Assembly (NCBI GenBank): GCA_048013815.1
Contig: CM106585.1
Span: 1,178,001 to 1,242,000, forward strand
From: Setoptus koraiensis
Taxonomy: Eukaryota; Animalia; Arthropoda
DNA length: 64,000 nucleotides
Reading direction: 5' to 3'
In this document: piece after piece, positions 8,340 to 63,774 of the stretch
Layout of the letters: every line of letters starts with the position of its first letter
How positions within the stretch are numbered: the first letter of the stretch is position 1
Program-made: the position numbers and the translations under genes
The notes under the pieces: model-generated
The model's database searches: none
Told to the model about the DNA's origin: nothing
What the model saw: only the letters and a program-made list of their open reading frames with translations

Positions 8340-8772
8340 CTTCTTTGCGGCTTTTCATTGCCAGACGGCGCTCTGGCCTGTCGTTCAGTGTCAATTTGTC
8401 GCGCTGGCCCCTGGCGCATAAATCAGGCCCCACTGTGCAGTCTTGCTGTGGCCCTGATGTTGCACTTGGCCGTGTGTCGCGCTCGCTGTGCCCGTTACTT
8501 GAACTACTCAGGCGCTGCGACAATGCTCTTGAATTGCCAATCGATGGTGCGCCAGCAGCGATCGTATCGTGAAAAGCGGCGGTGTCACGTTGCAAATTGT
8601 TGCCACCATTATTTGGTTGCTGGTAATTCAATTGCGGGCGCCCCACTGGATGTTGCTGTCGTTGGCCGACTCGCCTAGGTGATGGCTGGTCCATTGTTGA
8701 TTTTATCAGCCTCAACAACAACAACAAATTGTCTGGCGAGTGGGCGCCGCTGCTGCCGTTGTAGTTGTTGTC

Positions 8773-8803
<31 letters not shown>

Positions 8804-11800: not shown

Positions 11801-14301
11801 CACTCGAAGGCGAGGGCGTCATCGTCGAGACGCCGACCGGGCCCGCTTGAGCGCCCGATATTGAGTTTGCAGTTGTCGCCGTTGTCGCCGTTGTTGCCGC
11901 TGCCGGCGATCAACAAGCTCGCCGGCGCGCTCCTTGCCGGTTGTTTGTCGCAAAGTGAGGCCAACAGCTCGCTCATTTGTACTGGCTTGCATAGATCGCT
12001 GCTGGCCGTGGTTGGGCCATCGATATTGGACAACAATGGACGACAATGTTCGGGGCCCTGGTAATGAGAAGCATGATTGTAATTGTAATTACTACTGCCA
12101 GTGCTGCCGCCCGAGCTCGATAATAATAACAGAGGCACTGCTGGCGCGCTGCTTGCTTGGCCCAAATTTGAGATTGCAACAGCAACAACGACAACCAACA
12201 GCGAGCAGCATTTGCATCCACTAAGCTGGCTTTTGGCGCCGCCGCCATTGATATTAATCATCACATCATTGTAATTAGTTTCACTTTGTTGTACACAGGC
12301 CATTCGCAACTCAACATTCCTCCGCTTCTTCTCCTTCTTCGCTTGTGTTCCATCTAATAATAATTTCATCTTATTATACATGCACTGCGAGCGGCTCTGC
12401 TCGTGTCCGTGTGGCCGCTGCGGGCCCCACCAGATCGCGTGGCCGTCGGAATTGCCGCTGTTGCTTATTATTGGCCTCACTGGCCTGGCTGCCAGTGGGC
12501 CCGCGCTGCCAGACGCAATTGATATAAGCCAGCGCTTTGGGGCCTCGCTGTTGAGCATGAGTCGCTGTTTGAGATTGGTGTCGCTGCTGGCGATGCACTC
12601 AATTTTGCTCTCGGTGTGCTCGTGATTCGTGAGCCCCGAACTGCAGCCGCTACCCGCTGCTACCCGTGACAAAGGCGATTGGCCGCTCACAGCAACGTGA
12701 CGGGACTGGCGGGCGCGCGGATTTAGCTTGGCGGGCGCAGTAGCGGGCCCGACGGGGTTAAGCTGTTTGTCAGCGGGCCCAAAGATAATAGTGTCATAGA
12801 TGAGTGATTGAGCATTCAATTCTGTATGTAAATGTATGCAGCGGCAACAGTGGCGGTTGCCGCCGCCGCCGCTGCGGTCTTGGCGCGGCGCCGGCACGCT
12901 TGCCGCTACCGGCTGGCCATGTTGTGCACTTGTCCGCCGGTCACTTATAGGATGGCAGCGGTGCCGGTTCGATTCGCTTGGGCCCGCGATCGGCGGCCGT
13001 CGGTCAGTGGGGCCGCTTCGATGTAAACGATGTAAACAATGTAAACTATGTGAGCGATATAAACGATATGAATGTAAATGATGGCACTTGTTTCCATTGG
13101 CGCGCCAGCCATGACAGTTGGCCCCGTTGTCTCTAGTTGCGTCACTCGATTCGGTTGTTGTGGGGCCCATCGGTGGCCGATATGATACAAGTGAACAATC
13201 GGTGCAGCCGGCTGCACGGTGGCGCATTAAATTGGCAACTTCTTGTGTTTCTTTTTCATACTTCATCCCGTTATCATGGCCAACAACAATGGCACCGACA
13301 CCGTGCTCATATTCACTTAGGCCATTTTTACTTTTGGCGCCATTAAATGGGGCCCCTGAGAAGCACAAGAAAGAAATATTATCCTTATTATTGTTATTGC
13401 TTTTATCTATTATATAACAATAACAGTAATAATAATAATAATAGTTATAGCAATAATAATGATGATAATAATACTTTTGGGCCAGCCAATGCGGGGCCAG
13501 GCTGGCAAGGTTGAAGTGGTGTTGATGTTGGCAATTTAAACAAGCGACACAAGAGCGCATCAAATGCCAATAGCGGCCAACAGCGCCAACAAGGATATCG
13601 TTGCCGCTAAACGGATTTGGCGCCAAAAGTAAATATATTACACTTGAATAATTCATGGCCATTATCGCATTAGTTTTGCAATCGTTATACGGCCAACCAG
13701 CAGTGGCAATGGTCAAGTTGTTGTTAGCTAACTTGACGACCTCTGGCTCGGCGCAATTTGGCAATGCAGTTTTGCGGTACAAGCTTGCACAACAACAGTA
13801 CAAGTGGCACAATATATATCTAGACGATATATAGATGATGATGGCATCATTAGGGCAAACGAGGGGCGCCCTCTCTTGGCGAGACACCAAAAGCGTGTTA
13901 TTAAAATTATAATGCTCTATGGCTAATGGCCTCCGTGGGGCAAGTGGCCATGATTGTTTGTTTAGCGATTGTTTTTTCAATTTTGGCCACTCCGACATAA
14001 ATGATGATGATGATGATGAAAATGTCGATGATGGCTGCAACCGATTGGCAAGACAACCATAAACAAACAGTTGAAAATCACAGTTATAAACTATTATCAA
14101 TAGTGCTGCTGGTTCATTTAATTCGGCCGCTGAAGCTGCATATAGCCAGTCTAGACAATCGTTTTCTCTAGACAATTTCCTTCTGAGGTTTCGCTGATGC
14201 TGTTGTTTTCCCAATGAACAACTCGAACAGGCACCAACAGCGACAACATCATCGATTAGATTGCACCAACGAGACCGGCTGTCGGCTGTTGAATTCAGCA
14301 T
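8340..14301 (-). CDS. Very large coding exon of a low-complexity protein with no recognised domain (possibly secreted or membrane-bound); gene continues downstream
   Basis: 2043-codon open frame (8332..14463) with first ATG at 14301. It ends in a canonical donor, GAA G|GTGAGT (intron starts at 8339, phase 1). It contains Q/N/A/T runs, a hydrophobic segment LLVVVVAVAISNLGQASS (about 12.2 kb) and a dibasic RLKR site (about 9.43 kb). The 5' boundary is uncertain. Confidence 0.7.
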
Positions 14302-42779: not shown

Positions 42780-43160
42780 TTGAGGCACCCTCAAAGTTTT
42801 AGGAGATAAAGAAAAACTGTGCTGAGAGACACAGTCGAGTATCTGATTAAGTCGTTTGACGTATTAATCAATTACTGCGAGCAAAATGACCTTAACCTTG
42901 CCACTTAGTGCACACTAACTGATTTCTAAATGTCGGTAATCGATGCAGTCAGAGCGAAGTTGCACAACTGCAACTGCAAAGCAACGGAAGTAACATCGCC
43001 GATTGCACGACGATGCTACTTCCGGTCTCAGTGCGCAACTGCATCAATTAGTAGCTCTAGCTTTCTTGGCGGAAGAAGAGATCCGAGCAGTGAATCACTC
43101 AGACAAATTGTCGATATAAGAGCACAAGGTTTTATTGAATGGTCAAGCAAATAGTATTTG
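42780..43160 (+). mobile_element. Degenerate Mutator-like (MULE) transposase fragment
   Basis: TLTDF*MSVIDAVRAK and LAFL..EEI...ESLRQIVDIRAQG align at nucleotide and protein level with the better-preserved MULE copy at 55.4-56.1 kb (TDFEMSIINAVGVK; DSLIQIIDVRAQG). Confidence 0.75.
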
Positions 43161-44799
43161 CCAAATACACGCCAGCGGATATTGTTTGTATTTATCGGTA
43201 GACGGCCAATTGGACAGCCATCGCAGAGCCCAACAGATTGGATTTATATTTATCGATTGATACTTGATTGAATAGTAATCACCAGCCGGTGACCATTTTT
43301 CGACACAAAAATGGTTTCATATCACTGATATGATATCAGTTGACAACGGCGAGAGGCAATTCGGAGGCCGGGCATTTCGTTGCAGCAGAGTTGGTTGTGG
43401 GTGATTGTTTATTAAAGAGGACCCAAGTGCAGCAGATCAATTAAGAATTGAAGCCAACAAGATCCTGTAAATACCGAAGGCAGGGGAGGCCTCTGATCTA
43501 ATTGCAAGTCTATTCTGGCTGCGAGAAGCGAGTGTAGCAAAGTGCCAACAAACTCGCCAGCTTGTCGGTCAATGTGCCATCGTTGAGCCATCGGTGGTTA
43601 GGCGTGGGTGGTGGCCCCAATATCGTGCATAATAAATAATATTCACATTCAACTCTGGGTTGCGCATTGGATATCGAGCAGCCATGGCAGCATTATTTTG
43701 TGTTGAACAGTCGCTGTGTGTCGTTGGCGCCCATCATAATCGTTGTGCCGGTCATTATGGTTTGTATAAAGTAGAGCAGTTGTTTACAGTAGTTTGTTTG
43801 TGTGATGCAACAACTACAAACAAAACGCACACACACACACACATGTAAAACTTGCATAGTTGTTAGCTCTCTATCAGTGAAATGAGAGAATGAGAGCGCG
43901 CTCTTGGTGAGTTGTGATGCAAACCGACAAAAAGCCCAAAGGCGAAAGCGTGACTGGCCAGTGGCCAGCCAGCAGCGCTTGTCATCCGGTCACGTACAAT
44001 TTCTATCAGCACACAACAACAACAACAGCAACAACGCCAACAGTTACCTATCATCTGAAATTCACAACGGTCAGTCTGACAAAGAATTGCGCGAGGGGGA
44101 GAGAGGCCAAGAACAGTTGCAGTGTGTGTGTTATCATGATTATCACGAGTCATTTATTACCCACTGCGCAATACGATACTATTTGATACCATTCTATCTG
44201 TTACTGAACCATACCGTAATAGTACGATACTTCACGATAAACACTCCGTTTGGTCAACGCCATTCTAGAGGCGCCGCCAACCAACTGCAGCTACACCGTG
44301 TCTAGACCCTCACGAGCTGTGTGTCAACGGCATCATCAACCGCTAGCTTGCCAGCAAGCATGTTGGGGCCAAAATGGGTTTGTTCTAAATTCAAAAACAC
44401 ACATTGATAAGATAAGATGATAATAATGTTGAAAGGTGTGTTTTTGTTTGTTTGGGTATGGACCCACGGGCCCGTGGTGTATCATCCATGTGTGTATACA
44501 TTCATTTTCTGGCTGTATCATGTCGTGCAATCTATCTGGCGGCGTCGCTTAGTTGCATGCAGTGGCATTAGATCATCTCGTCTTGTATCAGCCACACATC
44601 GCATAATATCCTATTAGAACTTATCAAATCAAATCATACCATTTCGTGTCACATCACATCATCACATCCACCAGTGCGTGTATGTATGCGCGTGCCAGCG
44701 ACCTGTCAGATTATCTCACAATTGTCAGGTGATCAGTTTGTTGTTGCCAACAGCTGACTCACTGTGTCGTTCATCGAGCTAGATTTTTTGCCCCCTTCA

Positions 44800-50300: not shown

Positions 50301-51864
50301 CAAACAAACAAATGAGCCGCTATAGTTGTATAATCAAATAACTGTAAACTATTGTTACTGGTCACAACGACAACAAGAGCAGCAACAGCAGATGGGCAGG
50401 CTGCTATTATCATGCCATTGCTATCAAACGTTATGTAATGCTGAATGCGCTAGTAATAAAGTAAAAGTGATAGCTGCTGTAAGAGTTGTTGTAGGCCAGA
50501 AAGGGCAAGTGGCCTGCCATGTATTTATGCTCTATTGAATTGAGCACCAGTGAAAGTGTGACTGTGGCGCTCTTGACGAATGGGGCCACGCAGTTCACAA
50601 CAAGAAACAACAACAAATCGATGTCTGGGCGTTAGATGGACCATCAATTTAAATATAGTTATATGCACGTGTTTACATGAAACACAAATAGATATATCTG
50701 ACCATCTAAGCGGCTCAACAAGCAACCAGCCAACCAGACAACACCGAATATACGAACATCTAAACAGATAGCTGTGTGAAGATGGTACCAGTCAGTGGAT
50801 ATTGTCTCTGTTGTCGTTTGTTGGTCTTTGGCTGTTGGTTGTGCGCTGTTGATGCCCTCGCTGGCCATTCACTGGCTATCTAGATGGATAGCATAGCACT
50901 CAACAGCGCCTATTTGTCTGGATATAAATATCAAATTGCCAGCCAGCCGGTTGGCCAATAGACAACATCATGTCATCGAGGCACCATAAATATTGCATGC
51001 ATCACTAGGTATAATCTAGGTACAATCTAAATATAGTGATATCATATATATATATTTATATTTATATATATATAGTGTAGGAAGTACAGAGAGGCAGAAG
51101 CCACAAGGATACTGTTACCGAATTATTATTTATCACACAAACACACTTGAATCACTTTAATGCAGCACACACACACACAATTGAGCAACATGGGTGTCTA
51201 AGCAAAGTTTCGAGGGTTAGATAGCGAGCCAAGATCAAGAGCCGTCGAGCAATTGAGCTGATGCAAGCGCTGGTGTGCCGATGTCCAATCATCAATGCGA
51301 TCATATGATGATATAAATTGATACGAGGCCCACAGAGAGAGAGAGAGAGAGAGAGTATTGCTGAGTTGAGATGGTCGCACACGACTTGAGATATACTATC
51401 TATCTAGACATGGATGATGTTACGTCATGATGATATGATATGGTCTGATCCGAACCCAGCCGAACCGAACCGATCCAAGCCCAACCAAACTGAGCCAAGC
51501 CAAGCCGATCTGATCCGATCTGATCTGATATGACGTTGGACAGGCAAAAGAACGGGGGAGTCCGTTGGCATATTATATAACGCGGTTATGCGTTATGTAA
51601 TATATGTGTGTGTGTGTGTGTGTGCCATTGTAATATTGATGCGTCATATATTATAGGCAGACACTATGCATTGATATTGATGGAGCATGTCAGCGTGAAT
51701 CTCATGCATCTCTCATCATCATTGTCCGTGACGTGGCATCCGATCAAATGATGTGCTGATACACACCCAAACCGAGCCAATCATCGGACAAAGAACGCGG
51801 AACTTGCGCGTGGATTCGCTTCATGATCACCAGCTTCCACAACACAAACAACAGCAATTGAAAC

Positions 51865-51930
51865 TGCAACAACAACGACAACTACGATAACAACAACAAC
51901 AACAACAACAACAGCAACAACAACAACACC
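51865..51930. repeat. (CAA)n microsatellite
   Basis: Directly visible. Confidence 0.9.
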
Positions 51931-53260
51931 GACCCATCAATCTTGGTGATAGATAGAGTGAATAGTTTTTAATAGAGACAAGATAGACCATGTTCATGTT
52001 GTGCACCTGTACAAGTGGCGCGCATTAGCTTAGCGGGTCCCAGTGAAAGCATTTTATGCTCCAAACACCAGACAGACAATCCATTCAATTGACGGCGATG
52101 AACGTATGTCGATTGAACGTATGTCGACCAACATTTGGTACACACGATGAGCGACAATCCTAGTCTCTCATCTGTCCTCCCTCACCTGGCCAACTCAGCT
52201 AAGAGCTTAGGTAATTGAAGAGATGGAGAAGAGATTGGCCGAGGAATAGTTGCCTCAACAAGCTAAATTGTCACTTGTTTGATGACAAATTATAATCATA
52301 CCTCATGCTACCTACCTTTTGGTTGCTGCTTTGGCGCCACAATTGTCACCGGATAAGCCACTGATGTGAGCTATTATCGAGATGACACCGTTTAAGTATC
52401 AGAGAAAGATGTTGAGCATCTTATAATGCGAGATGAATAACTTAAGCTGATTTTTGTTCTTCTATTCGTGTGATTCTTTGTTTGTTTGCAAGTAGTTGTT
52501 GCACGCTATAGATAGCTGAACTTATACACAATACTTTTGCTACTTATATCCAGTTGAGCTCTATCGAAGATGACGACTGCATTCATTGTGACTTTAAATC
52601 AATTGCAATTATTACTATATTTTATGTTTGTGACACTTTTCTTACGTAACTTTTTCTATGTCGATATTGTGTGTATATTTAAATCTATTTGTGTGTGCAA
52701 TCAAGCAAAAGTTTTGTTTTGAATAGAGGACAGAAAAAAGCCATCTGACAATTGTTTTTTTTTGCATCTAGTTTGTGTTTATATCACTGTTGGGTCTCAT
52801 GAGTTACGTAACAAGAGTTTCGCAAGTTGACGAGACGACACAAGAGGCGAGCGAGACAAGACACATCACTTTAACTATTAACTACAACTGTCTTGTTTGA
52901 CATAATAACATTGACACTTTTTACCGAGACACTTTCTCTTGATTTTCTATTTCTTTTATCTTGTGTTGTGCACTTTTTGATGTTGTCATGTCTGCTAATG
53001 CTGTGACATTTTATTTTATTTTATCATTTAGCAATGCGATTCTATTGTTGATTGTTGATAATAGATTGTGCTCCCCACCAGATGTTGCCTCTTTCATGTT
53101 AAAGGCTCAAATGATGTTGATACAGTAACTTCACAACAACAATTATACTCACCATCTAAAGCACCTAGGGTAATACGCACGCGCGACACCTAGGCTCACG
53201 CCGCAAACCAAAACTGGTTCCTCATTGCAGCTTCAGCCAGTTTAGGGTGCATGGTCCCTT

Positions 53261-53468: not shown

Positions 53469-53702
53469 GTGTCAAGGGGTTGTCTCATTTCGGGGTATTT
53501 TTATTTTTGGTCTTCGATTCTTGAAAATAGGGTATGGTTGGAAAGATCTCTCTCCGGTGGAGCCAGAAATCTGGTTTATTTCTGTTTCTGGTTTTTCGAG
53601 AAATCTCGACCTGTTACACTGGACGAGCTGTTGTCAATGGATGAAAATATCTCAGTTTGTGTAGGCTCATTGGTCAGGGATATAATAAATTTAATAGAAT
53701 AA
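53469..53702 (+). pseudogene. 3'-terminal remnant of an F-box/LRR-UPF1-like helicase paralogue (cassette unit 1)
   Basis: 53597-53695 aligns closely with 61013-61110 (EKSRPVTLDELLSMDENISVCVGSLVRDIIN vs EKSRPVTLDDLLSENENILVCVGLLVRDLIN), in the same position relative to the ankyrin gene. Confidence 0.8.
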
Positions 53703-53743
53703 TAATAACTCAGATTGACCAGTGAATGCAAGCTATACGGCAT

Positions 53744-54607
53744 CTACGATGGAACATGGTGTCCTTCAGATTCGAACAATGTTCTCATAAAGTCACTCTC
53801 TTCATCACGATGCGATAATCTCGAGAACTCAATAGAACGGTGAGGTTTTCTACCCGCCCTATCCCTTATATGTGGGTCGGCACCACATTGCAGCAGTAGC
53901 TTCACCGCATCATAGCTTTCATGGAGGCAAGCTTGATGCAACACAGTATAACCCCTAGAATTATCATTGTTATCTATATAGTCAATCATTCCCTGTCTTC
54001 CTTCCTTCTCCTCCACATGCCTAAGTAGTAGCTCGAGACATCTCATGCCTTCTCTTTCATAGGCAGTGTAAAGTCCAAGATGAACAGGTAAAAACCCATA
54101 ATTCGTTCCGAGGATGTCCGAGGAAGTCTTCTTATAGTCTGCGCCAATCTCTAACAAAAACTTAATGCTTTCATAACGTGCCTTGTTCATGGCATGTGCC
54201 AAGGGAGTCATGCCCTTATGATCGTTTTGGTTTATGTCGAAACCCTTAGACATAACAAAACTAATCATTCCAGGGCTATTAGATTCTATAGCTAGATTCA
54301 GAGGTGCTCTACCGCTTTCTGTAAGATCAGCCCCATTTTGAATGAGAATTTCTGCAATCTCAACAGATCCACCCCTGATTGCTTTTTCTAGCGAACGAAC
54401 ATTAACATTAGCCCCTTTTGATATCAAATAGATGACAGTGTCAACTTGACCACCGAGTGAAGCGCCGTCCAGTGCTGTGTCGCCATGATAATCGGTATAA
54501 TCCACATCAATATTTTCTTCTTCAAGGTAGAACTTAACCTTCTCCATTCGGCCAGCCATCGCTTCTTGTACAAGTTGATCTCCATTTTTGTCGTTGGTTT
54601 GTTTCAT
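53744..54607 (-). CDS. Ankyrin-repeat protein (287 aa, about 7 repeats), paralogue 1, intronless
   Basis: Intact ATG-to-stop ORF with G-x-T-[AP]-L...L-L-x-x-G-A-D/N repeats (GDTALDGA...LISKGANVN; GMTPLAHA...LLEIGADY; GYTVLHQAC...LLQCGADPHIRD). Confidence 0.92.
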   Translation of the reverse strand: MKQTNDKNGDQLVQEAMAGRMEKVKFYLEEENIDVDYTDYHGDTALDGASLGGQVDTVIYLISKGANVNVRSLEKAIRGGSVEIAEILIQNGADLTESGRAPLNLAIESNSPGMISFVMSKGFDINQNDHKGMTPLAHAMNKARYESIKFLLEIGADYKKTSSDILGTNYGFLPVHLGLYTAYEREGMRCLELLLRHVEEKEGRQGMIDYIDNNDNSRGYTVLHQACLHESYDAVKLLLQCGADPHIRDRAGRKPHRSIEFSRLSHRDEESDFMRTLFESEGHHVPS

Positions 54608-54846
54608 AGCGTTGTTATCTCCAATTATTATTCGTCATGGAGAGGTTGATATTCCTGGATGAATATGTACCTTTGTATCACTCTACCTGTGCTGGTAGGT
54701 GCAAGATAGCTCACAATAATGACACGGATTTCAAAGGAAATATTTACAATGACTATGATAATACTGAATGTGAGCCAAGTTGAAAGTTACTATGGTCTCC
54801 GCTACTTTTGATATAATGCAACGTTATGAGTGAGATGATTGACAAA

Positions 54847-54943
54847 GGTATACTCGATAACAATCTCATTAGTCGGGTGTTACAAATGCTAGCACACGCT
54901 GTTGTTTCAATGTAAGTCAATTTGACACAAGAATGGCCCCCAT
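54847..54943. repeat. Duplicated segment 5' of ankyrin paralogue 1 (partner at 57780-57898)
   Basis: ggtatactcgataacaatct...cacgctgttgtttcaatgt...gaatggc(cg)ccccat is shared at equivalent positions upstream of ankyrin genes 1 and 2. Confidence 0.85.
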
Positions 54944-55261
54944 GCATTTTCAAATCGTAAATACCTTGCATCCAGCCGACAGATGTCGCCCTGGATTTTT
55001 TAGTGTTTCCAGAGGTTACCTGTCGTACATGAAAGATTTCACAATCTGTTGCAATGCGTCTAGCCTTATGTTTCGTCAACCTGGCTCACAACCGGCCGGG
55101 CCGAGGTTCTGGCTGGTTCGCGTCAAGACGCCAAATTCTATTGAATATCCGAATAGTCAATGTGGAGTATGGAATGTTTCGTTGCTCTGCTTCGCAATGA
55201 AATCTCATCAAAACAGGGTTTTCAATTCAAACGCCGAGAGCCTTCAATCCAAAACTATTAC

Positions 55262-55326
55262 GTAGAGGACTGTTGTACTCTGAATTCAGAAAAATCTCGA
55301 CTTATTACACTGGACGAGCTGTTGTC
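55262..55326 (+). pseudogene. Second 3'-tail remnant of the helicase gene (cassette unit 2)
   Basis: gtagaggactgttgtactctgaatt-cagaaaaatctcgacttattacactggacgagctgttgtc matches 60981-61050 with a small deletion; it is truncated next to the MULE remnant. Confidence 0.85.
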
Positions 55327-55447
55327 AAAGTTCCAGCCAAGAAAGGCCGGCAAACATCATTCAGCAGGCTGTTGGAGAGATGCCAATCGATGCTGCCTTT
55401 GATTTGCCTACTAGAATGGCTACCCGGAAAACAATCTATCGTCAAAG

Positions 55448-56094
55448 ATGATGATAATGGACGGGACATTTAAGTTTTGCCCTATTATCCATGGACAAAT
55501 TCATACCAAACATGGTCTTGTCGGGATTGGCGATAAGAAGAGATGCATGACCATGGTTCATGTTCTGATGTCGAACAAAAAAGAGCAGTCATATCTCAAG
55601 TTAATGGATGTTCCAATTGATCGATGTTCTAATTGATTAATGTGAGCAAAATGGCCTCAATCTTCCGCCACAGTACATACTGACAGATTTTGAGATGTCA
55701 ATTATCAATGCTGTCGGAGTCAAGTTTCCGAATGCACAAAGCACATTCGCACCGCGGATGCCTATTTCACCTAGGCCAGATAGTGTATCGAACCGTGCTA
55801 GGCAGAGGGCTTGTTAGATTGTACGGTGATACAGCTTCCGGTCTGAGTATGCAGGTGCGACAATTAGCACCTCTAGCTTTCTTACCGGAAGTCGAGATTC
55901 AAGCTGCTTCTGATTCACTTATACAGATTATTGATGTCAGAGCCCAAGGTTTGCTTGAATTGTTCGACAAGTACTATGTAGGAGGATATATCAAGAGTCA
56001 CGGTGTGCGTAAAGATGCCCAGTTTCCACCCGGAATGTGGTCAATTCATGACCTGGTGGTCGCGAAATTGCCGAGGACAACGGAAATAAATTGA
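55448..56094 (+). mobile_element. Mutator-like (MULE) DDE transposase remnant, frameshifted
   Basis: MDGTFKFCP (first catalytic D), TDFEMSIINAV (second D), HRGCLFHLGQ (CxxH motif) and FPPGMWSIHD...LPRT, spread over frames with stops. The catalytic E region is lost. Confidence 0.85.
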
Positions 56095-56538
56095 TGTGCT
56101 ATATATCAACCATTCTGCTATATTATCTATGGTGTCTACCTGGTTCAATACTGCCTCATGACGGGATACATCTGACCAACGGCATACATTTTTTTTGTAC
56201 ACTTGCTGCGGTATTTTGAAAGGACATTTCGTATAAGGAGTACTCCATGGTCGTACAGTTGTTTATACATGCGCAATCAAATGCTAGAGGTACAATTATT
56301 CATCACTATGAGAGATGAAAATTGTCAGATCTTCTCTTCAGTGTCGCCGATAATGTATGCACTGAGAGATGCAGTGAAACAACAGCGAGAAAGAGTGTCA
56401 TTCACAAGGTTTGAAAGATTGAGGCAAGCTTTCGAAAGAATGTCAGTAAACCAGAAGTAGACACTTGCCCCCTTGCCTCCTTCCCCCTGGACCATCGGAA
56501 ATTTTCTATGGGGCCCTTCCGGCGCTACAACTAAAGTT

Positions 56539-57414
56539 TCACGAAAATCTGGCTCGGTCGGCGAATAATTTTCCGAACAATTTCTGTATATGCTTGCGAT
56601 TGTCTATACGTGTTTCATTAATATGACACCAACTTACGATGCAATGGTAAGCTTTGCGACCCTTCTTATCTCTTATATTTGGGTCAGCGCCACATTCTAG
56701 CAACAGCTTGACCACATCATAGCATCCGATTGCACAGGCAGTATGCAAAGCAGTAGTCCCCCAATGATTGTCATTGTTATTTATATAGTCAATCATTCCT
56801 CGTCTTCCTTCCTTTGCCTCCACATGCTTTAGTAGTAGCTCTAGACATCTCAAGCTTTCTCTTCCTAAGTAATAACGAGGGTGATTAAAAGGTAAAAACC
56901 CATAATGCCTGCGCTATATGTCCGAGGAAGTCTTCTAATAGTCGGTGCCGTTCTCTAGCAAAAACTTAACGCTCTCATAACATCTAAACATCATGGCATG
57001 TGACAGAGGTGTTTCACCAAGATCGTTGTATTGGTCAATGTCCAAACCAACAGACATGACAAAACTAATCATTTCAGGGTCATTAGAGTATGTAGCTAGA
57101 TTCAGGAGATTGACACGTCTTACTTCTTTACAATCTGTTTTAGCTCCTTTTTGGATGAGGATTTTTGCAATCTCCACATGTCCTTTTTCAACCGCTCTTG
57201 CTAGCGGACAAAAATCAATATTAGCTCCCTTTGATATCAAGTAGTTAACAATATCAACATGTCCGCGAGAAGAAGCAATGGACAGTGCTGTGAGGCTACC
57301 ATCCTCAACATAATTCACATCAATGCTTGCTTCTTCAATATAAAACTTAACCTTTCTTAGTGGGCCACGAACTGCAGCCGACAATAGCTGACTGCGTAAC
57401 TCACCACTGGACAT
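56539..57414 (-). pseudogene. Ankyrin-repeat paralogue 2 (291 codons) with two in-frame TAG stops
   Basis: ORFs 56935..57414 and 56539..56853 share a frame. The bridge reads GTDY*KTSSDI*RRHYGFLPF...SLRCLELL, with TAG at 56935-37 and 56914-16, collinear with paralogues 1 and 3. Confidence 0.88.
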
Positions 57415-57779
57415 CGTGAGCTTGTATCACTTCATCTATGCTTGTACCGGAATTTACAGCTGAACATCCAAGTCCAGACATCTGCCGCAAAATTGCTTCT
57501 GTGCTCCCCCAAATCTTATATCTAATGTATATATTGATGTAATATTTAGTGGTTATAGTAGATTCGACGAATTATATAACAGGCACTGGCTAGTGTAATG
57601 GTGCCAGATATTGTCTTCTGATGATAGCTATACGGGATAACACAATAATAATTCAGATGCCAATAAGAATATTTATTTTCGCTAAATGATAGCGAAAATA
57701 AAAGTAGGAATTGTCTCCGTTATCGTTGTTATTGTACCCTATTGTTTGGTGTTACATGTATGAGTTAATGCCTGACCAA

Positions 57780-57898
57780 GGTATACTCGATAACAATCTT
57801 ATCAGTCCGGTGTGTTTTGAAGGCTAGAACACGCTGTTGTTTCAATGTCGACAGGAGAATGACGTCAACCATTTCGACACTAGAATGGCCGCCCCCAT
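57780..57898. repeat. Duplicated segment 5' of ankyrin paralogue 2 (partner at 54847-54943)
   Basis: Direct nucleotide similarity to 54847-54943. Confidence 0.85.
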
Positions 57899-58346
57899 TA
57901 GTGTTGGGACAAATTGCATATTGCACAGCTATTTCCGCAGATTTCCAAATCCGCAAAAATTTTTGCGCACATTTGCGTCCTGACAGTTTCGATGTCAACT
58001 GCCATTATGGATTTTGCCAATGAGACACCGAAAGACTCACGCGTAGCTAATACTGTTGTCAACAGTCATTCTTACAGCTGTTTTTCATCGGATACAGTCT
58101 ATTCATAGACTGTATCCTGTTCGAGCTTTAGTATATGGAACTTTACCCACATAATGACGGCACAAACAAAATCTGATAAAATCCAAATCATCCTCATCAG
58201 TATTCTATCGCAGAACGATTGTTATTTTCAGTATTTGCATTGTTGCTCACAACAACACAATTTTGCCATAGCTTCAATACTCAAATTTTGTATGAATCAT
58301 TGTTGACCTTCTTCCTCTGGCTCACAAATACTTGTCAGCAAACACT

Positions 58347-60209
58347 ATGGCGTTAGAGGAACCGACGTGCTGGCTTGACCTGTTGCCCGTCGAAGTTTTG
58401 CTCATAATACTCGACCATCTTAGAGATCACAACGATCGCTACCATTTGTGCCTGCTGTCGGACCGACTAGCGAGTGTGGTATTGGTATCATATCAATTAC
58501 ATCGGACAATTGAGAGTTTATCACTCGATTATTGCATGGCAAACTCTATCTCCCTTGAAACGCTGGAGCCAATCCTTACTAGTGCCTTAAAACTCAAGTC
58601 ACTCAAATTTACGAATAACAGAAGTGAGAATGCGCTCAGAGGGATAGGGCCCGACGCTCATTTCATAATAACTGACAATTGTCCACAATTGGAAAGCTTG
58701 GACGTGTCTGGAGTGTCAATAGCTCCGTCTGAGCTCACATCAATATTGGAAAAATGTGATAGAATGACAACTTTAATAATTACCAGTAATCGATTAGATG
58801 ATGACAAGGAGCTGGAGATCATCAAGAGTCGCTGGCCTAATTTATCAATTTTTGATAGGAGATACACTATTGATCCCAAGAGTCGCTGGCCAAATTTATT
58901 AATTCTCGATAATTACTCCTTTAAAAGACTTGATACTCCTTATCGTGCATCTCGAATAGGTGGAAAACTTTCGATTCTCAGTTTGACGGCGAGCGGAGAT
59001 TTATTCAGGAAAGAAGAAACTCTATTGGTTAATGAGATCCCGTTTAATGCTCACTCGTCAGAAGAAGACCTCAGATACTCCGAGCAAGATTTCACAGAAA
59101 TACAATGGAGTCGGCACTGCACTGGTGATGAATACTGGATTGCGAAAATAGAATTAGATGCATTCGATCGATCGTTTCTTCGAAATATCGACTTCCATAC
59201 CAATCTGGAGCTGTCTGAATTTAATGCACTCGGTGTGAGGATATGGTCAGCAAGAGGATGGCTTCATCATGTTAATATCATCTCTTCCCCTAACCGCCAT
59301 CTGCTTGTTGCACCTCGTCGCTCCGGCTCTCTTTCTGGGGGGTATATCAATTTCACACTGACTCATTTCTTTAGTCTTGATAAGAACTGGTGGTATTTTG
59401 ATGTATGCAAATATTTGCCAACTAAAGGCTTGTTCAGATTGATTAATCTCACGCTTATAGAAAAGCACAGAAAGAAGAGGACATTCATTGGGCTCCAACG
59501 AATCTTATCTGACAACTTGCTTCGTTCTGTCTTTCTTCCCCAAAGAAATGTACATGTAAACTGGTCAAGAAAAAATCTATTGAAATCTGTAACAATAGAC
59601 ATGAAGACCTTAGCTGATGATTTCAATCGGCTTGATGAATGTCAAATGGATGCAATCAAAAATTCATTGTCTAATAGAATCAGTTTGATCATGGGACCAA
59701 CGGGCACGGGAAAGACAGTGACTGCTACCTTATTGGCCTTGAAACTATTCCAGACGAGATTCTCTAGCAGATCCAAGATACTTTTTTGTGCTGCAGACAA
59801 CAAGACCATCGATAATATAGCAGAAAAGATTCACGAATCTGGCGAACTCAGAGTTGTTAGAATTGGTCCTGAGTATTTCATGAAAGAACAGGATGCAAAA
59901 TATAAGCCATATTACTTGAACAGGCTCTTGCACGAAAGAGGCCTTGATTCAATAGATCCTTTCGATATAAATGAACTAACGTTATTACTGTGGAGTTACT
60001 GTGATCCAGGAAGTTTAAGTCTTGAAAGTGACGAGAGAAAAAAAAATCGGAATGAGAGGAGTCGTTGCAAGCGAGAAATTCTTGACAAATCAGATGTTAT
60101 TTGTTGTACTTGCGAAGACATTCTTTCATTGTCAATATACAGTATGCCTTGTCTTATCGATTCTATAATTGTTGATGACTGCAGCCAAGTCAGAGTTCCA
60201 GACGGCTGA
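58347..60209 (+). CDS. F-box + LRR + UPF1-like SF1 RNA helicase fusion, 5' part (F-box, LRRs, 1B-like region, RecA1 to motif II)
   Basis: First ATG at 58347. F-box LDLLPVEVLLIILDHL. FBXL-type LRRs (NCPQLESLDVSG; EKCDRMTTLII). Q motif LDECQ. Walker A GPTGTGKTVT. ILFCAADNKTIDNIAEKIH (UPF1 VLVCAPSNIAVDQLTEKIH). DVICCTC. Motif II VDDCSQ. No introns. Confidence 0.88.
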   Translation: MALEEPTCWLDLLPVEVLLIILDHLRDHNDRYHLCLLSDRLASVVLVSYQLHRTIESLSLDYCMANSISLETLEPILTSALKLKSLKFTNNRSENALRGIGPDAHFIITDNCPQLESLDVSGVSIAPSELTSILEKCDRMTTLIITSNRLDDDKELEIIKSRWPNLSIFDRRYTIDPKSRWPNLLILDNYSFKRLDTPYRASRIGGKLSILSLTASGDLFRKEETLLVNEIPFNAHSSEEDLRYSEQDFTEIQWSRHCTGDEYWIAKIELDAFDRSFLRNIDFHTNLELSEFNALGVRIWSARGWLHHVNIISSPNRHLLVAPRRSGSLSGGYINFTLTHFFSLDKNWWYFDVCKYLPTKGLFRLINLTLIEKHRKKRTFIGLQRILSDNLLRSVFLPQRNVHVNWSRKNLLKSVTIDMKTLADDFNRLDECQMDAIKNSLSNRISLIMGPTGTGKTVTATLLALKLFQTRFSSRSKILFCAADNKTIDNIAEKIHESGELRVVRIGPEYFMKEQDAKYKPYYLNRLLHERGLDSIDPFDINELTLLLWSYCDPGSLSLESDERKKNRNERSRCKREILDKSDVICCTCEDILSLSIYSMPCLIDSIIVDDCSQVRVPDG

Positions 60210-61117
60210 ACCTGCTGCGATATCGGCCCAGAAGGTTTGTACTTGTAGGCGACGATAATCAATTCCAACCATTCATGAAGGAATGTTTATATAACAAACT
60301 CAAAGGTATCGGTTTCGAATCGATCTCGCTGAATGTTCAGTACCGCATGCACCCGGAGATAGCGAAATTTCCCAACGAACACTTCAATGGAGGAAAGATT
60401 AGGAATGGTATTCAAGCGAGCGATAGAAAGTGGATAGGTAACCAGGATATGTGCCCGTTCCCCAATCCCGACAGGCCCATCTATTTTCATTGCCACACTT
60501 CAGATGAGAGCTCGAGATCCCAATCGACATCGTGGATCAACGAGGGCGAAGTCGAAATCGTTATTGCCACGATTGATATTCTGCTTTCGCGGGGTCTTCA
60601 TAAGAACGACATTGGAGTGATAACACCTTACAAAGATCAGAGTAATCTTATCAGAGACCGATTAAAGCCCAGACCAAACCACCAACCAGCCGACGAAACG
60701 GACCATGCAGATTACATACACCTCCGATATATTTTGGGACAATATTATGATGGAGATGTTTGTGTCGAAGTAGATACAGTTGATACCACATACCAAGGTC
60801 GTGAAAAAAACTACATTATTGTTTCATTGGTTAGATCAAGAGACTGTTGTGGTTGTATTTTCGATTGGAGGATGTTGAATATAGCGCTTACTCGAGCTAA
60901 ATACGGTCTCATCATAATTGGAAACGGATTGGCTTTAGTGAACAATCCATTGCTTAATTTATTGCTTAAGGATTGTTCTGGTAGAGGACTGTTGTACTCT
61001 GAATTGTTGTCAGAGAAATCTCGACCTGTTACACTGGACGACCTGTTGTCGGAGAACGAAAATATCTTAGTTTGTGTAGGTTTATTGGTCAGGGATTTGA
61101 TAAATAAATTGACTTAG
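60203..61117 (+). CDS. UPF1-like helicase fusion, 3' part (motifs III-VI), in the -1 frame relative to the 5' part
   Basis: The frame of ORF 60275..61117 is open upstream as LNLLRYRPRRFVLVGDDNQFQP (motif III), then QYRMHPEI (IV), IGVITPY, YQGREKNYIIVSLVRS (V) and LNIALTRAKYG (VI). PFPNPDRPIYF and STSWINEGE match UPF1 WPQPDKPMFF and GTSYLNRTE. Confidence 0.88.
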   Translation, partial: RLNLLRYRPRRFVLVGDDNQFQPFMKECLYNKLKGIGFESISLNVQYRMHPEIAKFPNEHFNGGKIRNGIQASDRKWIGNQDMCPFPNPDRPIYFHCHTSDESSRSQSTSWINEGEVEIVIATIDILLSRGLHKNDIGVITPYKDQSNLIRDRLKPRPNHQPADETDHADYIHLRYILGQYYDGDVCVEVDTVDTTYQGREKNYIIVSLVRSRDCCGCIFDWRMLNIALTRAKYGLIIIGNGLALVNNPLLNLLLKDCSGRGLLYSELLSEKSRPVTLDDLLSENENILVCVGLLVRDLINKLT

Positions 61118-61162
61118 ATTGATGTGCCTCATATTAACTATACGGCTATGAGGCACCCACAA

Positions 61163-62050
61163 TCAACTATAGTATTCATCTGCTTCAAACAATATCCTTA
61201 TATAGTCGACTTCTCTTTCTTCTTCGACATTTTCGTCAGAACAAGTAAATCTTGACCACCGAATATGATCGAAAGGTTTTCTACCTTCATTATCTCTAAT
61301 AGTTGGGTCCGCGCCACAATCTAGCAACAGCCTGACCATATCATACCTTTCTGAGTGGCAAGCTACATGCAAAGCAGTAACGCCGTCAGAATTATCATTG
61401 TTATTTATATAGTCGATCAATCCTCGTCTTCGTTCCTTTTCCTCCACATGCTTGAGTAGTAGCTCTAAACATCTTATGCTCTCTCTCACAATAAAAGGTT
61501 CACCCTGGTAGTGGACAGGTAAGAAGCCATAACCTCCCTTCCCAAATTCGCTAGCAGAAGTCTTCTTATAATCTGCGTTGTTCTCTAGCAAAAACCTAGC
61601 GCTTTCATAACTCGCTGTCGAAATGGCAAATGCCAGGGGTGTTATACCCTGGTCGTTGTACTCGTTAATGTCAAAAAAACCTTGAGACATAACATAGCTG
61701 ATCATTTCAGGATGATTGGACCTTACAGCCCAATGTAGAAGATGACTACCGCTTTCTGTAGGATCAGCCCCGTTTCGAATGAGGATTGTTGCAATCTCAA
61801 CAGATCCGGCCTCAACAGCATCTATTAATGATCTAACATTAACACTAGCTCCCTTTGATATCAAGTAATTGACAGTGTCAACCTGCCTGGACCCAGAAGC
61901 GAGGGACAGTGCTGTATCGCCATGTTTATCGGTATAATCCACATCAATATTTTCCTCTTCAAGGTAGAACTTAATCTTCTCTATTCGCCCCAATCTGGCA
62001 TCGCTTAAAAGTTCCCATTTTCGTCCATTTTCGTTGTTGCTATGTTCCAT
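61163..62050 (-). CDS. Ankyrin-repeat protein (295 aa, about 7 repeats), paralogue 3, intronless
   Basis: Intact ORF collinear with paralogue 1 (GDTALSLA; GITPLAFA; GVTALHVAC...LLDCGADPTIRD). Confidence 0.92.
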   Translation of the reverse strand: MEHSNNENGRKWELLSDARLGRIEKIKFYLEEENIDVDYTDKHGDTALSLASGSRQVDTVNYLISKGASVNVRSLIDAVEAGSVEIATILIRNGADPTESGSHLLHWAVRSNHPEMISYVMSQGFFDINEYNDQGITPLAFAISTASYESARFLLENNADYKKTSASEFGKGGYGFLPVHYQGEPFIVRESIRCLELLLKHVEEKERRRGLIDYINNNDNSDGVTALHVACHSERYDMVRLLLDCGADPTIRDNEGRKPFDHIRWSRFTCSDENVEEEREVDYIRILFEADEYYS

Positions 62051-62303
62051 AGCTAAAGAAATAATAGCGCTTTTGTTAAAATTTTGTACTGATCAAATAT
62101 TTTACAAAAAATACCACTCTCTAACGTTAAGTAAAATTGTTTTGTTTACTTTAACCTATTTTGAGGAGAAACGGAGAGTGTTGTTAGTAACTTATGTAAA
62201 AATATTTATCAAGTTCTTATAGCGAAGAATTCTGGGTAAAACACCGTTAGGCTAATCTTTAGTCGAATTTTTTGTTCTAGATTTTATCCAAAAGCTCTAA
62301 ATT

Positions 62304-62366: not shown

Positions 62367-62703
62367 CTAAAATATACTATGACAAGATTAAGATGGCTTG
62401 CAAGTTGCAACTTGCAGATCATATGGTTCACAATAATAAATCGGTCGCAAATAGTTTTTCATCTGACAGCGCTCACTGTGCGGACATTGTGTCGCCTTGT
62501 GTTCGGTTGTCCTCGGCAAGAAAGTCGAAATCCGCCGCACGGAAAATACACTGTGGAAGTTAGCGTAGCTTTTCTAGTTAAAAAAAATTGTTATTGCGAC
62601 TACCCTCCACAATAACTTGTAATAATAATAATACATGTATATCAGAGAGCTATCAATAATTATTTATCACTTGAACCGTTGTTGGACCGTAACAGTTAGC
62701 TTT

Positions 62704-63774
62704 ATGATGTATTCAGGAGGAGGTAGCAGCAGATTTAACAATTTTCAAAATCATAACCGTACTCATGGAACCCAAGAACCAGATTCTTCAATGAATAGAA
62801 ACTGTACCGACCTGGTTCTTCTAGATAGAACAAGCTCAACTATACCCCCAATTGGTAATTCCGTCCTTGATTCAACAGAAAACTCAATATTCACTGCCAA
62901 CCTTAGTGATGTCGCTATAATGAGCCAAGTTCTCAAAGAGATCAATCATGTCAACGACAAGTCTGTCTTTGTGATAAACAAGCAAGGAGTTAGGATAGTT
63001 ACGTCGGGTGAACCTTCGTTCCAAGTGTCCGTGCTGTTTGAGAAAGAAATGTTTGAAACTTATGTATATAATTCAAATCAGGACACAGAATTTGGATTTC
63101 TATTGAAACACTATATCCAGTGTCTTAATTTACTCTGTGATGATTTGGCCAACGACGATGATAGTCAAGTACATACCAATAACACTTCACGGTTTCCAAC
63201 ATCTTTGTATATGCAGTATAGAAGTAGGGGGGACCAAAAGAAGCTCAAGTTGGAGTTGGGATCGTACACGGCAAGAATTGATTTGAAATCTTTTGAAGCC
63301 GAAGTTCTGCCTCTAGGATACGGAGAAGGTGATGATGGAAACATTGGAAGCATCACCTTTAATTCAAGTAAATTCTACGAATTGATAAGTAGTCTGGATT
63401 TTTCCAGCAACTTCATAGAGATATCTTTGGAGAATTCGGGTACCCCTTTGAAATTGACAACAAATTCAGAGTTAGGTCAAGTTGAAGTAGTAGTCGTTGA
63501 CAGCCCACAGGAAAACATCATCATTGGTGGAACCAACAAATGTCCCTTATCTTCCACGTTCAATTTTAGATATAGAACAAGTTTTATGAAACCTGCTATA
63601 CAAGCATTAACAACTTCGTCAAGAGTAACTCTCAAATGCGATAGTTACGGACTACTATGCCTAGAGCACATAAAGAGTTACAACACTGCAACGTCATCAC
63701 AAGAAAACGTTCAGAGGAAATGCTCCGTAGAATATTATATGATGTCTGAAGCAAGTGAGGCAGAACTATACTGA
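62704..63774 (+). CDS. RAD1: Cell-cycle checkpoint clamp subunit RAD1 (9-1-1 complex), intronless
   Basis: FTANLSDVAIMSQVLKEI...INKQGVRI...FQVSVLFEKEMF; YIQCLNLL; FRYRTSFMKPAIQALTTSSRVTLKCDSYGLLCLEH; CSVEYY match Rad1-family motifs (LKPSTKALVLSCKVSIRTDNRGFLSLQ; CFVEYY). Likely start is the ATG at 62704 or 62707 within ORF 62635..63774. Confidence 0.88.
   Translation: MMYSGGGSSRFNNFQNHNRTHGTQEPDSSMNRNCTDLVLLDRTSSTIPPIGNSVLDSTENSIFTANLSDVAIMSQVLKEINHVNDKSVFVINKQGVRIVTSGEPSFQVSVLFEKEMFETYVYNSNQDTEFGFLLKHYIQCLNLLCDDLANDDDSQVHTNNTSRFPTSLYMQYRSRGDQKKLKLELGSYTARIDLKSFEAEVLPLGYGEGDDGNIGSITFNSSKFYELISSLDFSSNFIEISLENSGTPLKLTTNSELGQVEVVVVDSPQENIIIGGTNKCPLSSTFNFRYRTSFMKPAIQALTTSSRVTLKCDSYGLLCLEHIKSYNTATSSQENVQRKCSVEYYMMSEASEAELY

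What the first reader, a model, noticed from the sequence alone, without database searches (positions are those of the whole stretch)
53469..62050. Three-unit tandem array of a convergent helicase + ankyrin cassette under birth-and-death turnover
Seen: the same arrangement, helicase 3' end -> <- ankyrin gene, recurs three times. Unit 1 has a helicase tail and an intact ANK gene. Unit 2 has a helicase tail, a MULE remnant and an ANK pseudogene. Unit 3 has the full fusion gene and an intact ANK gene. A shared upstream segment precedes ANK1 and ANK2. Inference: a two-gene module (variable ANK binder plus F-box/helicase effector) duplicated as a unit next to housekeeping genes. This pattern is typical of defence or immune loci and could be an undescribed anti-viral or anti-symbiont system. 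Passive co-duplication of neighbours is the null explanation.
Basis: partly seen in the sequence, partly recalled or inferred. Interest (0 to 1): 0.85.

Follow-up and report, generated by a model that had tools for sequence, protein, structure and literature searches.

The report
Tandem Wolbachia-type ankyrin genes beside helicase
Three diverged tandem copies of an intronless ankyrin gene, whose only close relatives are Wolbachia proteins, sit in an animal chromosome next to one F-box/LRR-helicase gene and two tiny leftovers of its 3' end; this looks like a horizontally acquired gene duplicating and decaying locally, not a two-gene defence system.

Summary
There are three ankyrin (ANK) paralogues on the minus strand, 71-73% identical in DNA: ANK1 and ANK3 are intact, and ANK2 has two in-frame stops next to a MULE transposase remnant. 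Only one helicase exists. The two "helicase tails" are remnants of about 130 and 70 nt. The "full fusion gene" changes reading frame at about 60,206-60,212 inside conserved helicase sequence; the supposed intron there is coding sequence.

The two-gene defence-module reading is not supported. None of the five nearest helicase homologue loci carries an ANK gene. None of the ANK homologue loci carries a helicase. ANK1 is kept intact without a helicase.

The new result is that the ANK genes form a 100/100-supported clade with Wolbachia ANK proteins (38-42% identity end to end). One of these lies in an ANK-rich island beside a large serine recombinase. The window's copies have host-like GC3. This points to Wolbachia-host gene transfer followed by tandem triplication, as with the chalcid-wasp CLANK genes.

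The repeat framework is under purifying selection (omega about 0.3). The canonical contact positions evolve at or above the neutral rate.

One puzzle remains: the helicase remnants are 5-14% diverged, against about 45% at ANK synonymous sites.

Other notes of this scan (s1-321303, s1-321349) read this same stretch.

The parts
53562..53702 (+). Helicase 3' remnant 1. It covers only the last ~43 codons of the helicase. The conserved island is 53598-53690; the part to its left is gappy and diverged.
   Evidence: tblastn aligns helC residues 236-277 here at 65% identity. The island is 71/80 identical to unit 3 while the flanks are at random level. Local alignment.
53744..54607 (-). ANK1: an intact, intronless ankyrin-repeat gene of 287 aa.
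   Evidence: Single ORF. Pfam Ank_2 E=2e-31. dN/dS against ANK3 is 0.41.
54712..54960 (.). Shared non-coding segment, copy 1 (core 54836-54960). It lies between the ANK1 start and helicase remnant 2.
   Evidence: Matches 57641-57890: 67% over 214 nt, with a core about 85% identical and a 17-nt indel. No Rfam match.
55262..55330 (+). Helicase 3' remnant 2, about 65-70 nt. Its left edge is sharp, and it abuts the MULE-derived insertion on the right.
   Evidence: 87% identical to 60981-61050. 61 of 65 aligned bases are identical, with one 5-nt gap.
55331..56400 (+). MULE transposase remnant. It separates remnant 2 from ANK2.
   Evidence: Pfam MULE matches 55448-55633 at E=0.0038. The Atlas neighbours of ORF 55690-56091 are MULE fragments from Rotifera and Arthropoda. 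A paralogous copy lies at 42.8-43.2 kb.
56539..57414 (-). ANK2 pseudogene. It keeps the same frame throughout but has two in-frame stops, at 56935-56937 and 56914-56916.
   Evidence: Translation. tblastn gives a single-frame match of 252 aa at 58% identity to ANK1.
57641..57890 (.). Shared non-coding segment, copy 2. It lies between the ANK2 start and the helicase start.
58347..61117 (+). F-box/LRR + UPF1-like (AAA_11/AAA_12) helicase gene. It is full length, but the reading frame changes at about 60206-60212, between helicase motifs II and III.
   Evidence: Pfam AAA_11 E=6e-23, AAA_12 E=2e-47, weak F-box-like E=0.004. Three-frame translation. P0003 residues 533|534 meet at the break.
61163..62050 (-). 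ANK3: an intact, intronless ankyrin-repeat gene of 295 aa. It is convergent with the helicase, with 45 nt between the two stop codons.
   Evidence: ORF. Pfam Ank_2 E=9e-35. Its closest relatives are Wolbachia-type ANK proteins.
62635..63774 (+). RAD1 checkpoint clamp gene, the right-hand neighbour. It is not part of the repeat.
   Evidence: Pfam Rad1 E=5e-24. Atlas RAD1 clusters.

Best explanation
An intronless ankyrin gene of Wolbachia (prophage-WO-island) type became resident in this animal chromosome. It lies tail-to-tail with one member of the host's lineage-specific F-box/LRR-UPF1-like helicase family.

A segment holding the ANK gene and at least the 3' end of the helicase was then duplicated locally, giving three units.

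The units have since decayed independently. Two carry only 70-130 nt of helicase. Unit 2 took a MULE insertion, and its ANK acquired stop codons. The single full-length helicase has a broken frame in this assembly.

ANK1 and ANK3 remain functional protein-binding modules. Their repeat framework is under purifying selection, and their target-contact positions are diversifying.

The ANK-helicase adjacency is positional, not a functional two-gene system.

Shown: the anatomy, the Wolbachia affinity, the host-like composition, the selection pattern, and the lack of linkage at the accessible homologue loci.

Inferred: the direction of transfer (Wolbachia to host), the order of events, and that ANK1 and ANK3 are expressed.
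For: Anatomy.

Wolbachia affinity:
- A search with ANK3 alone found only P0001 and P0002 at E<=1e-20.
- The profile search added P0153, named 'ankyrin repeat domain-containing protein [Wolbachia]' by NCBI. Scores then drop from E=1e-81 to 1e-51 for generic ANK proteins.
- Pairwise identity is 38-42% over nearly the full length, including the non-repeat stretch LELLLKHVEEKE.
- In the maximum-likelihood tree, the window's ANKs and the Wolbachia-type ANKs form one clade with 100/100 support on a stem of 1.49.
- P0153 sits beside a large serine recombinase, a DUF2924 gene and a cluster of ANK genes that includes one of 2494 aa. That is the layout described for prophage WO and WO-like islands (PMC9203015).
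- L001 is a 32% GC contig with an IS4-type transposase fragment.

Residence in the host:
- ANK GC3 is 0.37-0.38. RAD1 is 0.375 and the helicase 0.40-0.44. The Wolbachia-type homologues are 0.18-0.28.
- No other Wolbachia-like sequence occurs in the window.
- RAD1 and the helicase are eukaryotic genes.

Selection:
- Overall dN/dS is 0.41-0.54.
- Framework omega is about 0.3. Contact positions differ at 17/25 against 33/124 for framework positions (Fisher p=1.3e-4). Surface dN is 0.76-1.8, against framework dS of 0.46-0.65.

No linkage:
- Helicase homologues P0003-P0007 (33-37% identity) have no ANK neighbour, and L002 shows a helicase followed by a helicase.

Precedent: chalcid-wasp CLANK genes (PMC6161386).
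Against: - The helicase-derived remnants are only 5-14% diverged, while ANK synonymous sites are about 45% diverged. Simple co-duplication followed by neutral decay does not predict this. It needs gene conversion or some constraint.
- A segment shared upstream of ANK1 and ANK2 also lies upstream of the helicase. Whole helicase+ANK units may therefore have been duplicated and kept for a time.
- The direction of transfer is unresolved; the tree shows a trichotomy.
- The contigs used to test linkage are short and come from a single other sample.
- No expression data could be obtained. The library kinds of the runs are unknown.
Confidence: 0.6

Rival explanations
1. ANK (a variable binder) and the F-box/LRR-helicase (an effector) form a functional two-gene module. 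The module duplicates as a unit under birth-and-death turnover and acts as an antiviral or anti-symbiont system.
For: - The convergent pairing recurs three times, at least as remnants.
- The segment shared upstream of remnant 2 and of the helicase fits duplication of whole cassettes.
- ANK contact positions evolve at or above the neutral rate.
- The ANK is symbiont-derived, which could suit a decoy or guard role.
Against: - Two of the three helicases are reduced to 70-130 nt, and the third has a broken frame.
- ANK1 is maintained with no partner.
- No linkage is seen in any accessible homologue locus of either family.
- Other notes on helicase arrays in this genome do not mention ANK.
- There are no expression or interaction data.
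Confidence: 0.08
2. The conserved helicase-tail island, and perhaps the shared upstream segment, are functional non-coding elements of the ANK genes. The acquired bacterial gene uses the antisense of the helicase 3' end as its 3' UTR or poly(A) region, or as an antisense or small-RNA trigger against the helicase family. Every retained ANK copy therefore keeps that piece.
For: - The island is 86-93% conserved, while neighbouring neutral sequence is at random level.
- The differences within it are mostly non-synonymous in the helicase frame, so it is not conserved as coding sequence.
- On the ANK strand, AATAAA lies just beyond the island in units 1 and 3.
Against: - Conservation ends close to the helicase stop codon rather than at a landmark of the ANK gene.
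- In unit 2 the island lies 1.2 kb from ANK2, beyond the MULE remnant.
- The same motif is conserved within the helicase family itself (L002), so short gene-conversion tracts explain it equally well.
- There are no RNA data.
Confidence: 0.15
3. The array is an assembly artefact, for example haplotypes or dispersed paralogues collapsed into or stitched as a tandem array. Alternatively, the ANK genes are bacterial contamination.
For: Contigs from other runs differ by 4-5% over parts of the region. They sit at 3-5 times the depth of the exact-match contigs, and one has a joint from 61050 to 61388.
Against: - The units differ by about 28% in DNA, far too much to be collapsed alleles.
- Exact-match contigs from independent runs cover the helicase and ANK3.
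- ANK GC3 matches the host genes.
- Host-derived helicase remnants and a eukaryotic MULE lie between the ANK copies.
Confidence: 0.03

Closest known systems
CLANKs: chalcid-wasp lineage-specific ankyrin genes derived from an ancient prokaryote (Wolbachia-like) transfer (Pers & Lynch 2018, PMC6161386)
   Same: These are ankyrin-only genes in an arthropod-type genome whose nearest relatives are Wolbachia proteins. After acquisition they duplicated and diverged rapidly, with the copies retained under selection.
   Different: - CLANKs are a large dispersed family, with related ANK-PRANC genes. Here there is a three-copy local array, and Pfam finds no PRANC domain.
- The host species is unknown to me.
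- No expression or function has been shown here.
Ankyrin-repeat genes of Wolbachia prophage WO, its eukaryotic association module and WO-like islands (PMC5062602, PMC9203015)
   Same: The window's ANKs form a 100/100-supported clade with Wolbachia ANK proteins. One of these lies next to a large serine recombinase inside an ANK-rich island. Length and repeat order are the same, at about 290 aa.
   Different: - The window's copies sit in a eukaryotic chromosome with host-like GC3.
- They carry a 12-residue deletion in repeat 2.
- They are only 38-42% identical to the Wolbachia proteins.
- No orthologue was found in the deposited phage WO genomes, which give only generic 31% matches.
UPF1-like superfamily-1 helicases (Pfam AAA_11 + AAA_12) and F-box/LRR substrate adaptors of SCF ubiquitin ligases
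   Same: - AAA_11 and AAA_12 both match strongly.
- Walker A (GPTGTGKT) is present.
- The N-terminal region is homologous to relatives whose F-box scores pass the Pfam threshold.
   Different: - The fusion of an F-box/LRR part with a helicase appears lineage-specific. Only five relatives reach E<1e-30 among 1.84 billion representatives, and all come from one sample.
- Motif II reads DDCSQ rather than DExxQ.
- The frame is broken in this copy.
Tandem birth-and-death gene clusters of immune or defence loci (for example NLR or KIR-type clusters)
   Same: Tandem paralogues, one pseudogene, a transposon insertion, and variation concentrated at binding positions.
   Different: - There is no evidence of immune function.
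- Only three copies are present.
- The supposed partner gene is not co-retained.
- Overall dN/dS is below 1.

Membership tests
Ankyrin-repeat protein | Several 33-residue ANK repeats recognised by profile models | tested here: met
   Pfam Ank_2, Ank, Ank_4 and Ank_5 match at E=1e-17 to 1e-35 for ANK1 and ANK3, and both halves of ANK2 also match.
Wolbachia-derived gene laterally transferred to an animal host | The nearest relatives are Wolbachia proteins, forming a supported clade apart from other ANK proteins | tested here: met
   The tree clade has 100/100 support on a stem of 1.49.
Wolbachia-derived gene laterally transferred to an animal host | The gene is integrated in host chromosomal DNA, between eukaryotic genes and with host-like composition, and is not contamination | tested here: met
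   RAD1, the F-box helicase and a MULE remnant flank and interleave the copies. GC3 is 0.37-0.38, like the neighbouring genes, against 0.18-0.28 in the Wolbachia-type homologues. No other Wolbachia sequence occurs in the window.
Wolbachia-derived gene laterally transferred to an animal host | Direction of transfer is bacterium to host, shown by the host clade nesting inside bacterial diversity | tested here: inconclusive
   The tree gives an unresolved trichotomy of two Wolbachia-type lineages and the window clade.
Wolbachia-derived gene laterally transferred to an animal host | The gene is transcribed and functional in the host | not testable with these tools
   Purifying selection (dN/dS 0.41; framework omega about 0.3) implies function. 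No run of known RNA type was available, and the single read-laying run had been used.
UPF1-like SF1 helicase | AAA_11 and AAA_12 domains with Walker A, a DExx motif II, and an intact reading frame | tested here: not met
   Both domains and Walker A are present. Motif II reads DDCSQ, and the frame breaks between motifs II and III. This is either a pseudogene or an assembly error.
F-box/LRR SCF adaptor | An F-box that passes the Pfam threshold, followed by LRRs | tested here: inconclusive
   In the window's protein, F-box-like scores 17.4 bits (threshold 24.3) and the LRR match is below threshold. Homologues P0004-P0006 pass (26-33 bits) and align over residues 9-158.
Two-gene defence module (conserved gene pair) | The two genes stay adjacent at other loci or in other genomes | tested here: not met
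   L002, L004 and L005 have no ANK gene downstream of the helicase, and L002 shows a helicase followed by a helicase. L003 and L006 are uninformative because the contigs end. The ANK homologue loci L001 and L007-L010 have no helicase.
Two-gene defence module (conserved gene pair) | Both partners are retained together in the duplicated units | tested here: not met
   Units 1 and 2 keep only 70-130 nt of the helicase, yet ANK1 is intact.
Two-gene defence module (conserved gene pair) | Induction on infection, or physical interaction between the partners | not testable with these tools
   This needs expression and interaction experiments.

The most novel reading that the evidence does not exclude
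A host-domesticated, symbiont-derived ankyrin family works together with the neighbouring F-box/LRR-helicase. The ANK proteins would act as diversifying decoys or sensors of Wolbachia or viral factors, feeding into an SCF-type helicase adaptor. Alternatively, the ANK 3' UTRs carry an antisense copy of the most conserved helicase segment and regulate the helicase family through small RNAs. Either version would explain why each ANK copy keeps an unusually well conserved helicase-tail fragment.
Probability: 0.07. Interest if true: 0.8.

Novelty: new member of a known kind. Interest (0 to 1): 0.38.

Why it matters
If it holds, this is another case of a Wolbachia-type ankyrin gene being fixed, duplicated and diversified in an animal genome. 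Its framework is under constraint and its contact surface is changing quickly. That is the pattern expected of a gene recruited into host-symbiont or regulatory interactions, as with the wasp CLANK genes. It also shows how a tidy repeated "gene pair" can be an illusion created by small conserved leftovers of a neighbouring gene. The unexplained conservation of those leftovers is a small, testable puzzle: gene conversion against a 3' UTR or antisense function.

Tried and rejected
- An exact look-up of ANK3 in public assemblies found nothing on record.
- A word-indexed search with the helicase N-terminal part found nothing. The exhaustive search was needed.
- Rfam found no match on 52.5-63 kb.
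- The consensus fold of the shared upstream segment is weak (-7.2 kcal/mol) with no covariation. An RNA gene was rejected.
- I asked whether the shared upstream segment is a MULE terminal inverted repeat. Only a 16-nt inverted match exists (54897-54912 and 57832-57847 against 56372-56387), and the alignment does not extend. Rejected.
- I asked whether the host F-box/LRR part derives from the LRR+ANK gene next to the Wolbachia homologue. Only generic LRR similarity was found (E=0.019). Rejected.
- I looked for the P0153 orthologue in deposited phage WO genomes. Only generic 31% ANK matches were found.
- More helicase sequence in units 1 and 2 was sought with sensitive blastn and tblastn. None was found.
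- The helicase-gene upstream element was not found in the homologue loci.
- The SRPK neighbour was not found, either by kinase motifs or by Pfam on ORFs of 60 aa or more at 48-52 kb. It may lie in small exons.
- The Atlas search with ANK3 gave only generic bacterial ANK clusters.
- Expression could not be assessed. The library kinds of the runs are unknown, and the single read-laying run gave fragmentary contigs.
Full report
**What is there**

The window is eukaryotic. RAD1 lies at 62635-63774 (Pfam Rad1, E=5e-24). Other notes of this scan on the same genome speak of an animal (unverified).

A self-comparison of 52-64 kb and tblastn of the local proteins against the whole window show three ankyrin genes on the minus strand:
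- ANK1, 53744-54607, 287 aa, intact.
- ANK2, 56539-57414. It keeps one frame but has two in-frame stops, at 56935-56937 and 56914-56916.
- ANK3, 61163-62050, 295 aa, intact.

The three are 71-73% identical in DNA and 57-60% in protein.

Only one helicase gene exists, at 58347-61117 on the plus strand. Pfam finds AAA_11 (E=6e-23), AAA_12 (E=2e-47), and a weak F-box-like and LRR signal.

The two further "helicase tails" are very small. Unit 1 holds the last 43 codons (53562-53690). Unit 2 holds 65-70 nt (55262-55330). Nothing else in the 64 kb resembles the helicase at E<=1.

A MULE transposase remnant fills the gap between remnant 2 and ANK2. A second diverged copy lies at 42.8-43.2 kb.

A non-coding segment is shared upstream of ANK1 and ANK2: 54712-54960 matches 57641-57890, with a core about 85% identical. 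It is not found upstream of ANK3.

**The full-length helicase is not an intact ORF**

Frame 0 ends ...IVDDCSQVRVPDG followed by a stop at 60207-60209. A second frame continues with LNLLRYRPRRFVLVGDDNQFQPF..., which is helicase motif III.

The closest intact homologue, P0003, aligns up to its residue 533 with the first ORF and from residue 534 with the second. The frame therefore changes inside conserved coding sequence.

This is either a real inactivating change or an assembly error. One contig of another run spans the site and shows one gap somewhere between 60024 and 60229, but I could not see where.

**Is the pair a module?**

The exhaustive protein search found 863 relatives of the helicase at E<=0.001. 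Only five reach E<1e-30, and most of these also share the N-terminal region. All five come from one Logan assembly. Their contigs carry eukaryotic genes such as a septin and Rer1.

None of these contigs has an ankyrin gene beside the helicase:
- In L002 the 3' end of one helicase is followed 750 nt later by the next helicase, and then by a convergent gene that is not an ANK gene.
- L004 has 3.2 kb of downstream sequence with no ANK.
- L003 and L006 end too close to the helicase gene to be informative.

Conversely, none of the ANK homologue loci carries a helicase.

Other notes of this scan list several F-box/LRR-helicase arrays elsewhere on this chromosome, and none mentions ankyrin (unverified).

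Within the array itself, ANK1 is kept intact with no helicase partner.

**Where the ANK gene comes from**

A search with ANK3 alone found just two proteins at E<=1e-20. A profile search added P0153, which NCBI names an ankyrin repeat protein of Wolbachia. After that the scores fall from E=1e-81 to 1e-51 for generic ANK proteins of about 500 aa.

Identity between the window's ANKs and these proteins is 38-42% over almost the full length. It includes a non-repeat stretch, LELLLKHVEEKE...Y.N.N.

In a maximum-likelihood tree, the three window ANKs and the five Wolbachia-type proteins form a clade with 100/100 support on a long stem. Inside it is an unresolved trichotomy.

In four Wolbachia assemblies, P0153 lies next to a large serine recombinase, a DUF2924 gene and a run of ANK genes, one of them 2494 aa long. 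That is the layout described for prophage WO and WO-like islands (PMC9203015, PMC5062602). L001 is a 32% GC contig with an IS4-type transposase fragment.

The window's ANK genes have GC3 of 0.37-0.38. RAD1 has 0.375 and the helicase 0.40-0.44. The Wolbachia-type homologues have 0.18-0.28. No other Wolbachia-like sequence is present in the window.

The simplest reading is an old transfer between Wolbachia and the host lineage, probably bacterium to host, followed by local triplication. The chalcid-wasp CLANK genes are the closest described parallel (PMC6161386).

**Selection on the ANK genes**

- dS is 0.67-0.74 and dN/dS is 0.41-0.54.
- I defined five repeats by register and used the six positions per repeat that contact targets in designed ankyrin proteins (positions 2, 3, 5, 13, 14 and 33; this set is from my own knowledge). 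ANK1 and ANK3 differ at 17 of 25 contact positions and at 33 of 124 framework positions (Fisher p=1.3e-4).
- Framework omega is about 0.3.
- Contact-position dN is 0.76 for ANK1-ANK3 and 1.7-1.8 for pairs that include ANK2. Framework dS is 0.46-0.65.
- The scaffold is therefore constrained, while the binding surface changes at or above the neutral rate. This agrees with note s1-321349.
- Only 25 contact codons are available and they are close to saturation, so I do not claim proven positive selection.

**An unexplained feature**

The helicase-derived remnants are much less diverged than the ANK genes they flank:
- The 40-nt core has at most 3 mismatches in all three units.
- Unit 2 against unit 3 is 61/65 identical, with one 5-nt gap.
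- The unit 1 island is 71/80 identical to unit 3.
- ANK synonymous sites differ at 44-47%, and 31% of codons for the same amino acid differ.

The few differences in the remnants mostly change the amino acid in the helicase frame, so the remnants are not conserved as coding sequence. The part of unit 1 left of the island is homologous but gappy, so the pattern is a mosaic.

The same C-terminal helicase motif is about 79% conserved in DNA even in L002.

I see three candidate explanations:
- Short gene-conversion tracts copied from the intact helicase.
- Late loss of helicases that had remained functional for a long time.
- Constraint as part of the ANK 3' UTR. AATAAA on the ANK strand lies just beyond the island in units 1 and 3.

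I could not separate these. For the same reason, I cannot say whether the original duplicated unit held the whole helicase or only its end.

**Polymorphism**

Contigs from other runs match parts of the region exactly. They also include versions 4-5% diverged over ANK2, the segment upstream of it and the helicase C-terminal part. These diverged versions sit at 3-5 times the depth of the exact matches. One joint runs from 61050 to 61388.

This points to a second, commoner haplotype or to further copies elsewhere. It also means that the state of ANK2 and of the helicase may differ between strains.

**Verdict**

The repeat is real, and the birth-and-death description is fair. The "helicase + ankyrin cassette" as a functional defence module is not supported.

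What is there is a Wolbachia-type ankyrin gene, resident and triplicated in an animal chromosome beside a lineage-specific F-box/LRR-helicase gene. This is a new member of a known kind of event, and its interest is moderate.

Noticed in passing
window 60180-60280: The helicase reading frame changes between motif II (DDCSQ) and motif III (LVGDDNQF). The stretch taken for an intron is conserved coding sequence. This is either a pseudogene or an assembly error.
   Followed up: yes
window 42800-43200: A second, diverged MULE transposase remnant, about 74% identical in DNA to 55630-55963. The element is therefore a repeated family in this genome.
   Followed up: partly
window 56400-62100 (contigs of runs X1, X2, X6): Other runs hold versions 4-5% diverged over ANK2, its upstream segment and the helicase C-terminal part. 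These sit at 3-5 times the depth of the exact-match contigs, and one joint runs from 61050 to 61388. This is either a second haplotype or extra copies elsewhere.
   Followed up: partly
window 54897-54912, 57832-57847 and 56372-56387: The 16-nt motif CGCTGTTGTTTCAATG sits in both shared upstream segments. It has a 94% complementary inverted copy 150 nt downstream of ANK2. The match does not extend further, and its meaning is unknown.
   Followed up: partly
L002:3-128 and L002:892-3366: In the closest helicase homologue locus, two helicase genes lie head to tail. Both end with the same C-terminal motif, (L/F)SxxLSEK..P..L. P0003 has a different N-terminus without an F-box, and its Walker A reads GPPGTGVT.
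   Followed up: partly
L007-L010:1-20888: The Wolbachia island around P0153 holds a large serine recombinase, a DUF2924 gene, an LRR+ANK gene of 756 aa, a 2494-aa ANK gene and several smaller ANK genes. This is a WO-like, ANK-rich island.
   Followed up: partly
window 51831-51935: A CAA/CAG-rich repeat that would encode polyglutamine if it is coding. I found no kinase domain in ORFs of 60 aa or more nearby.
   Followed up: partly
window 8000-12000: GC rises to 0.54-0.56 here, against about 0.40-0.45 in the rest of the window. I did not examine it.
   Followed up: no
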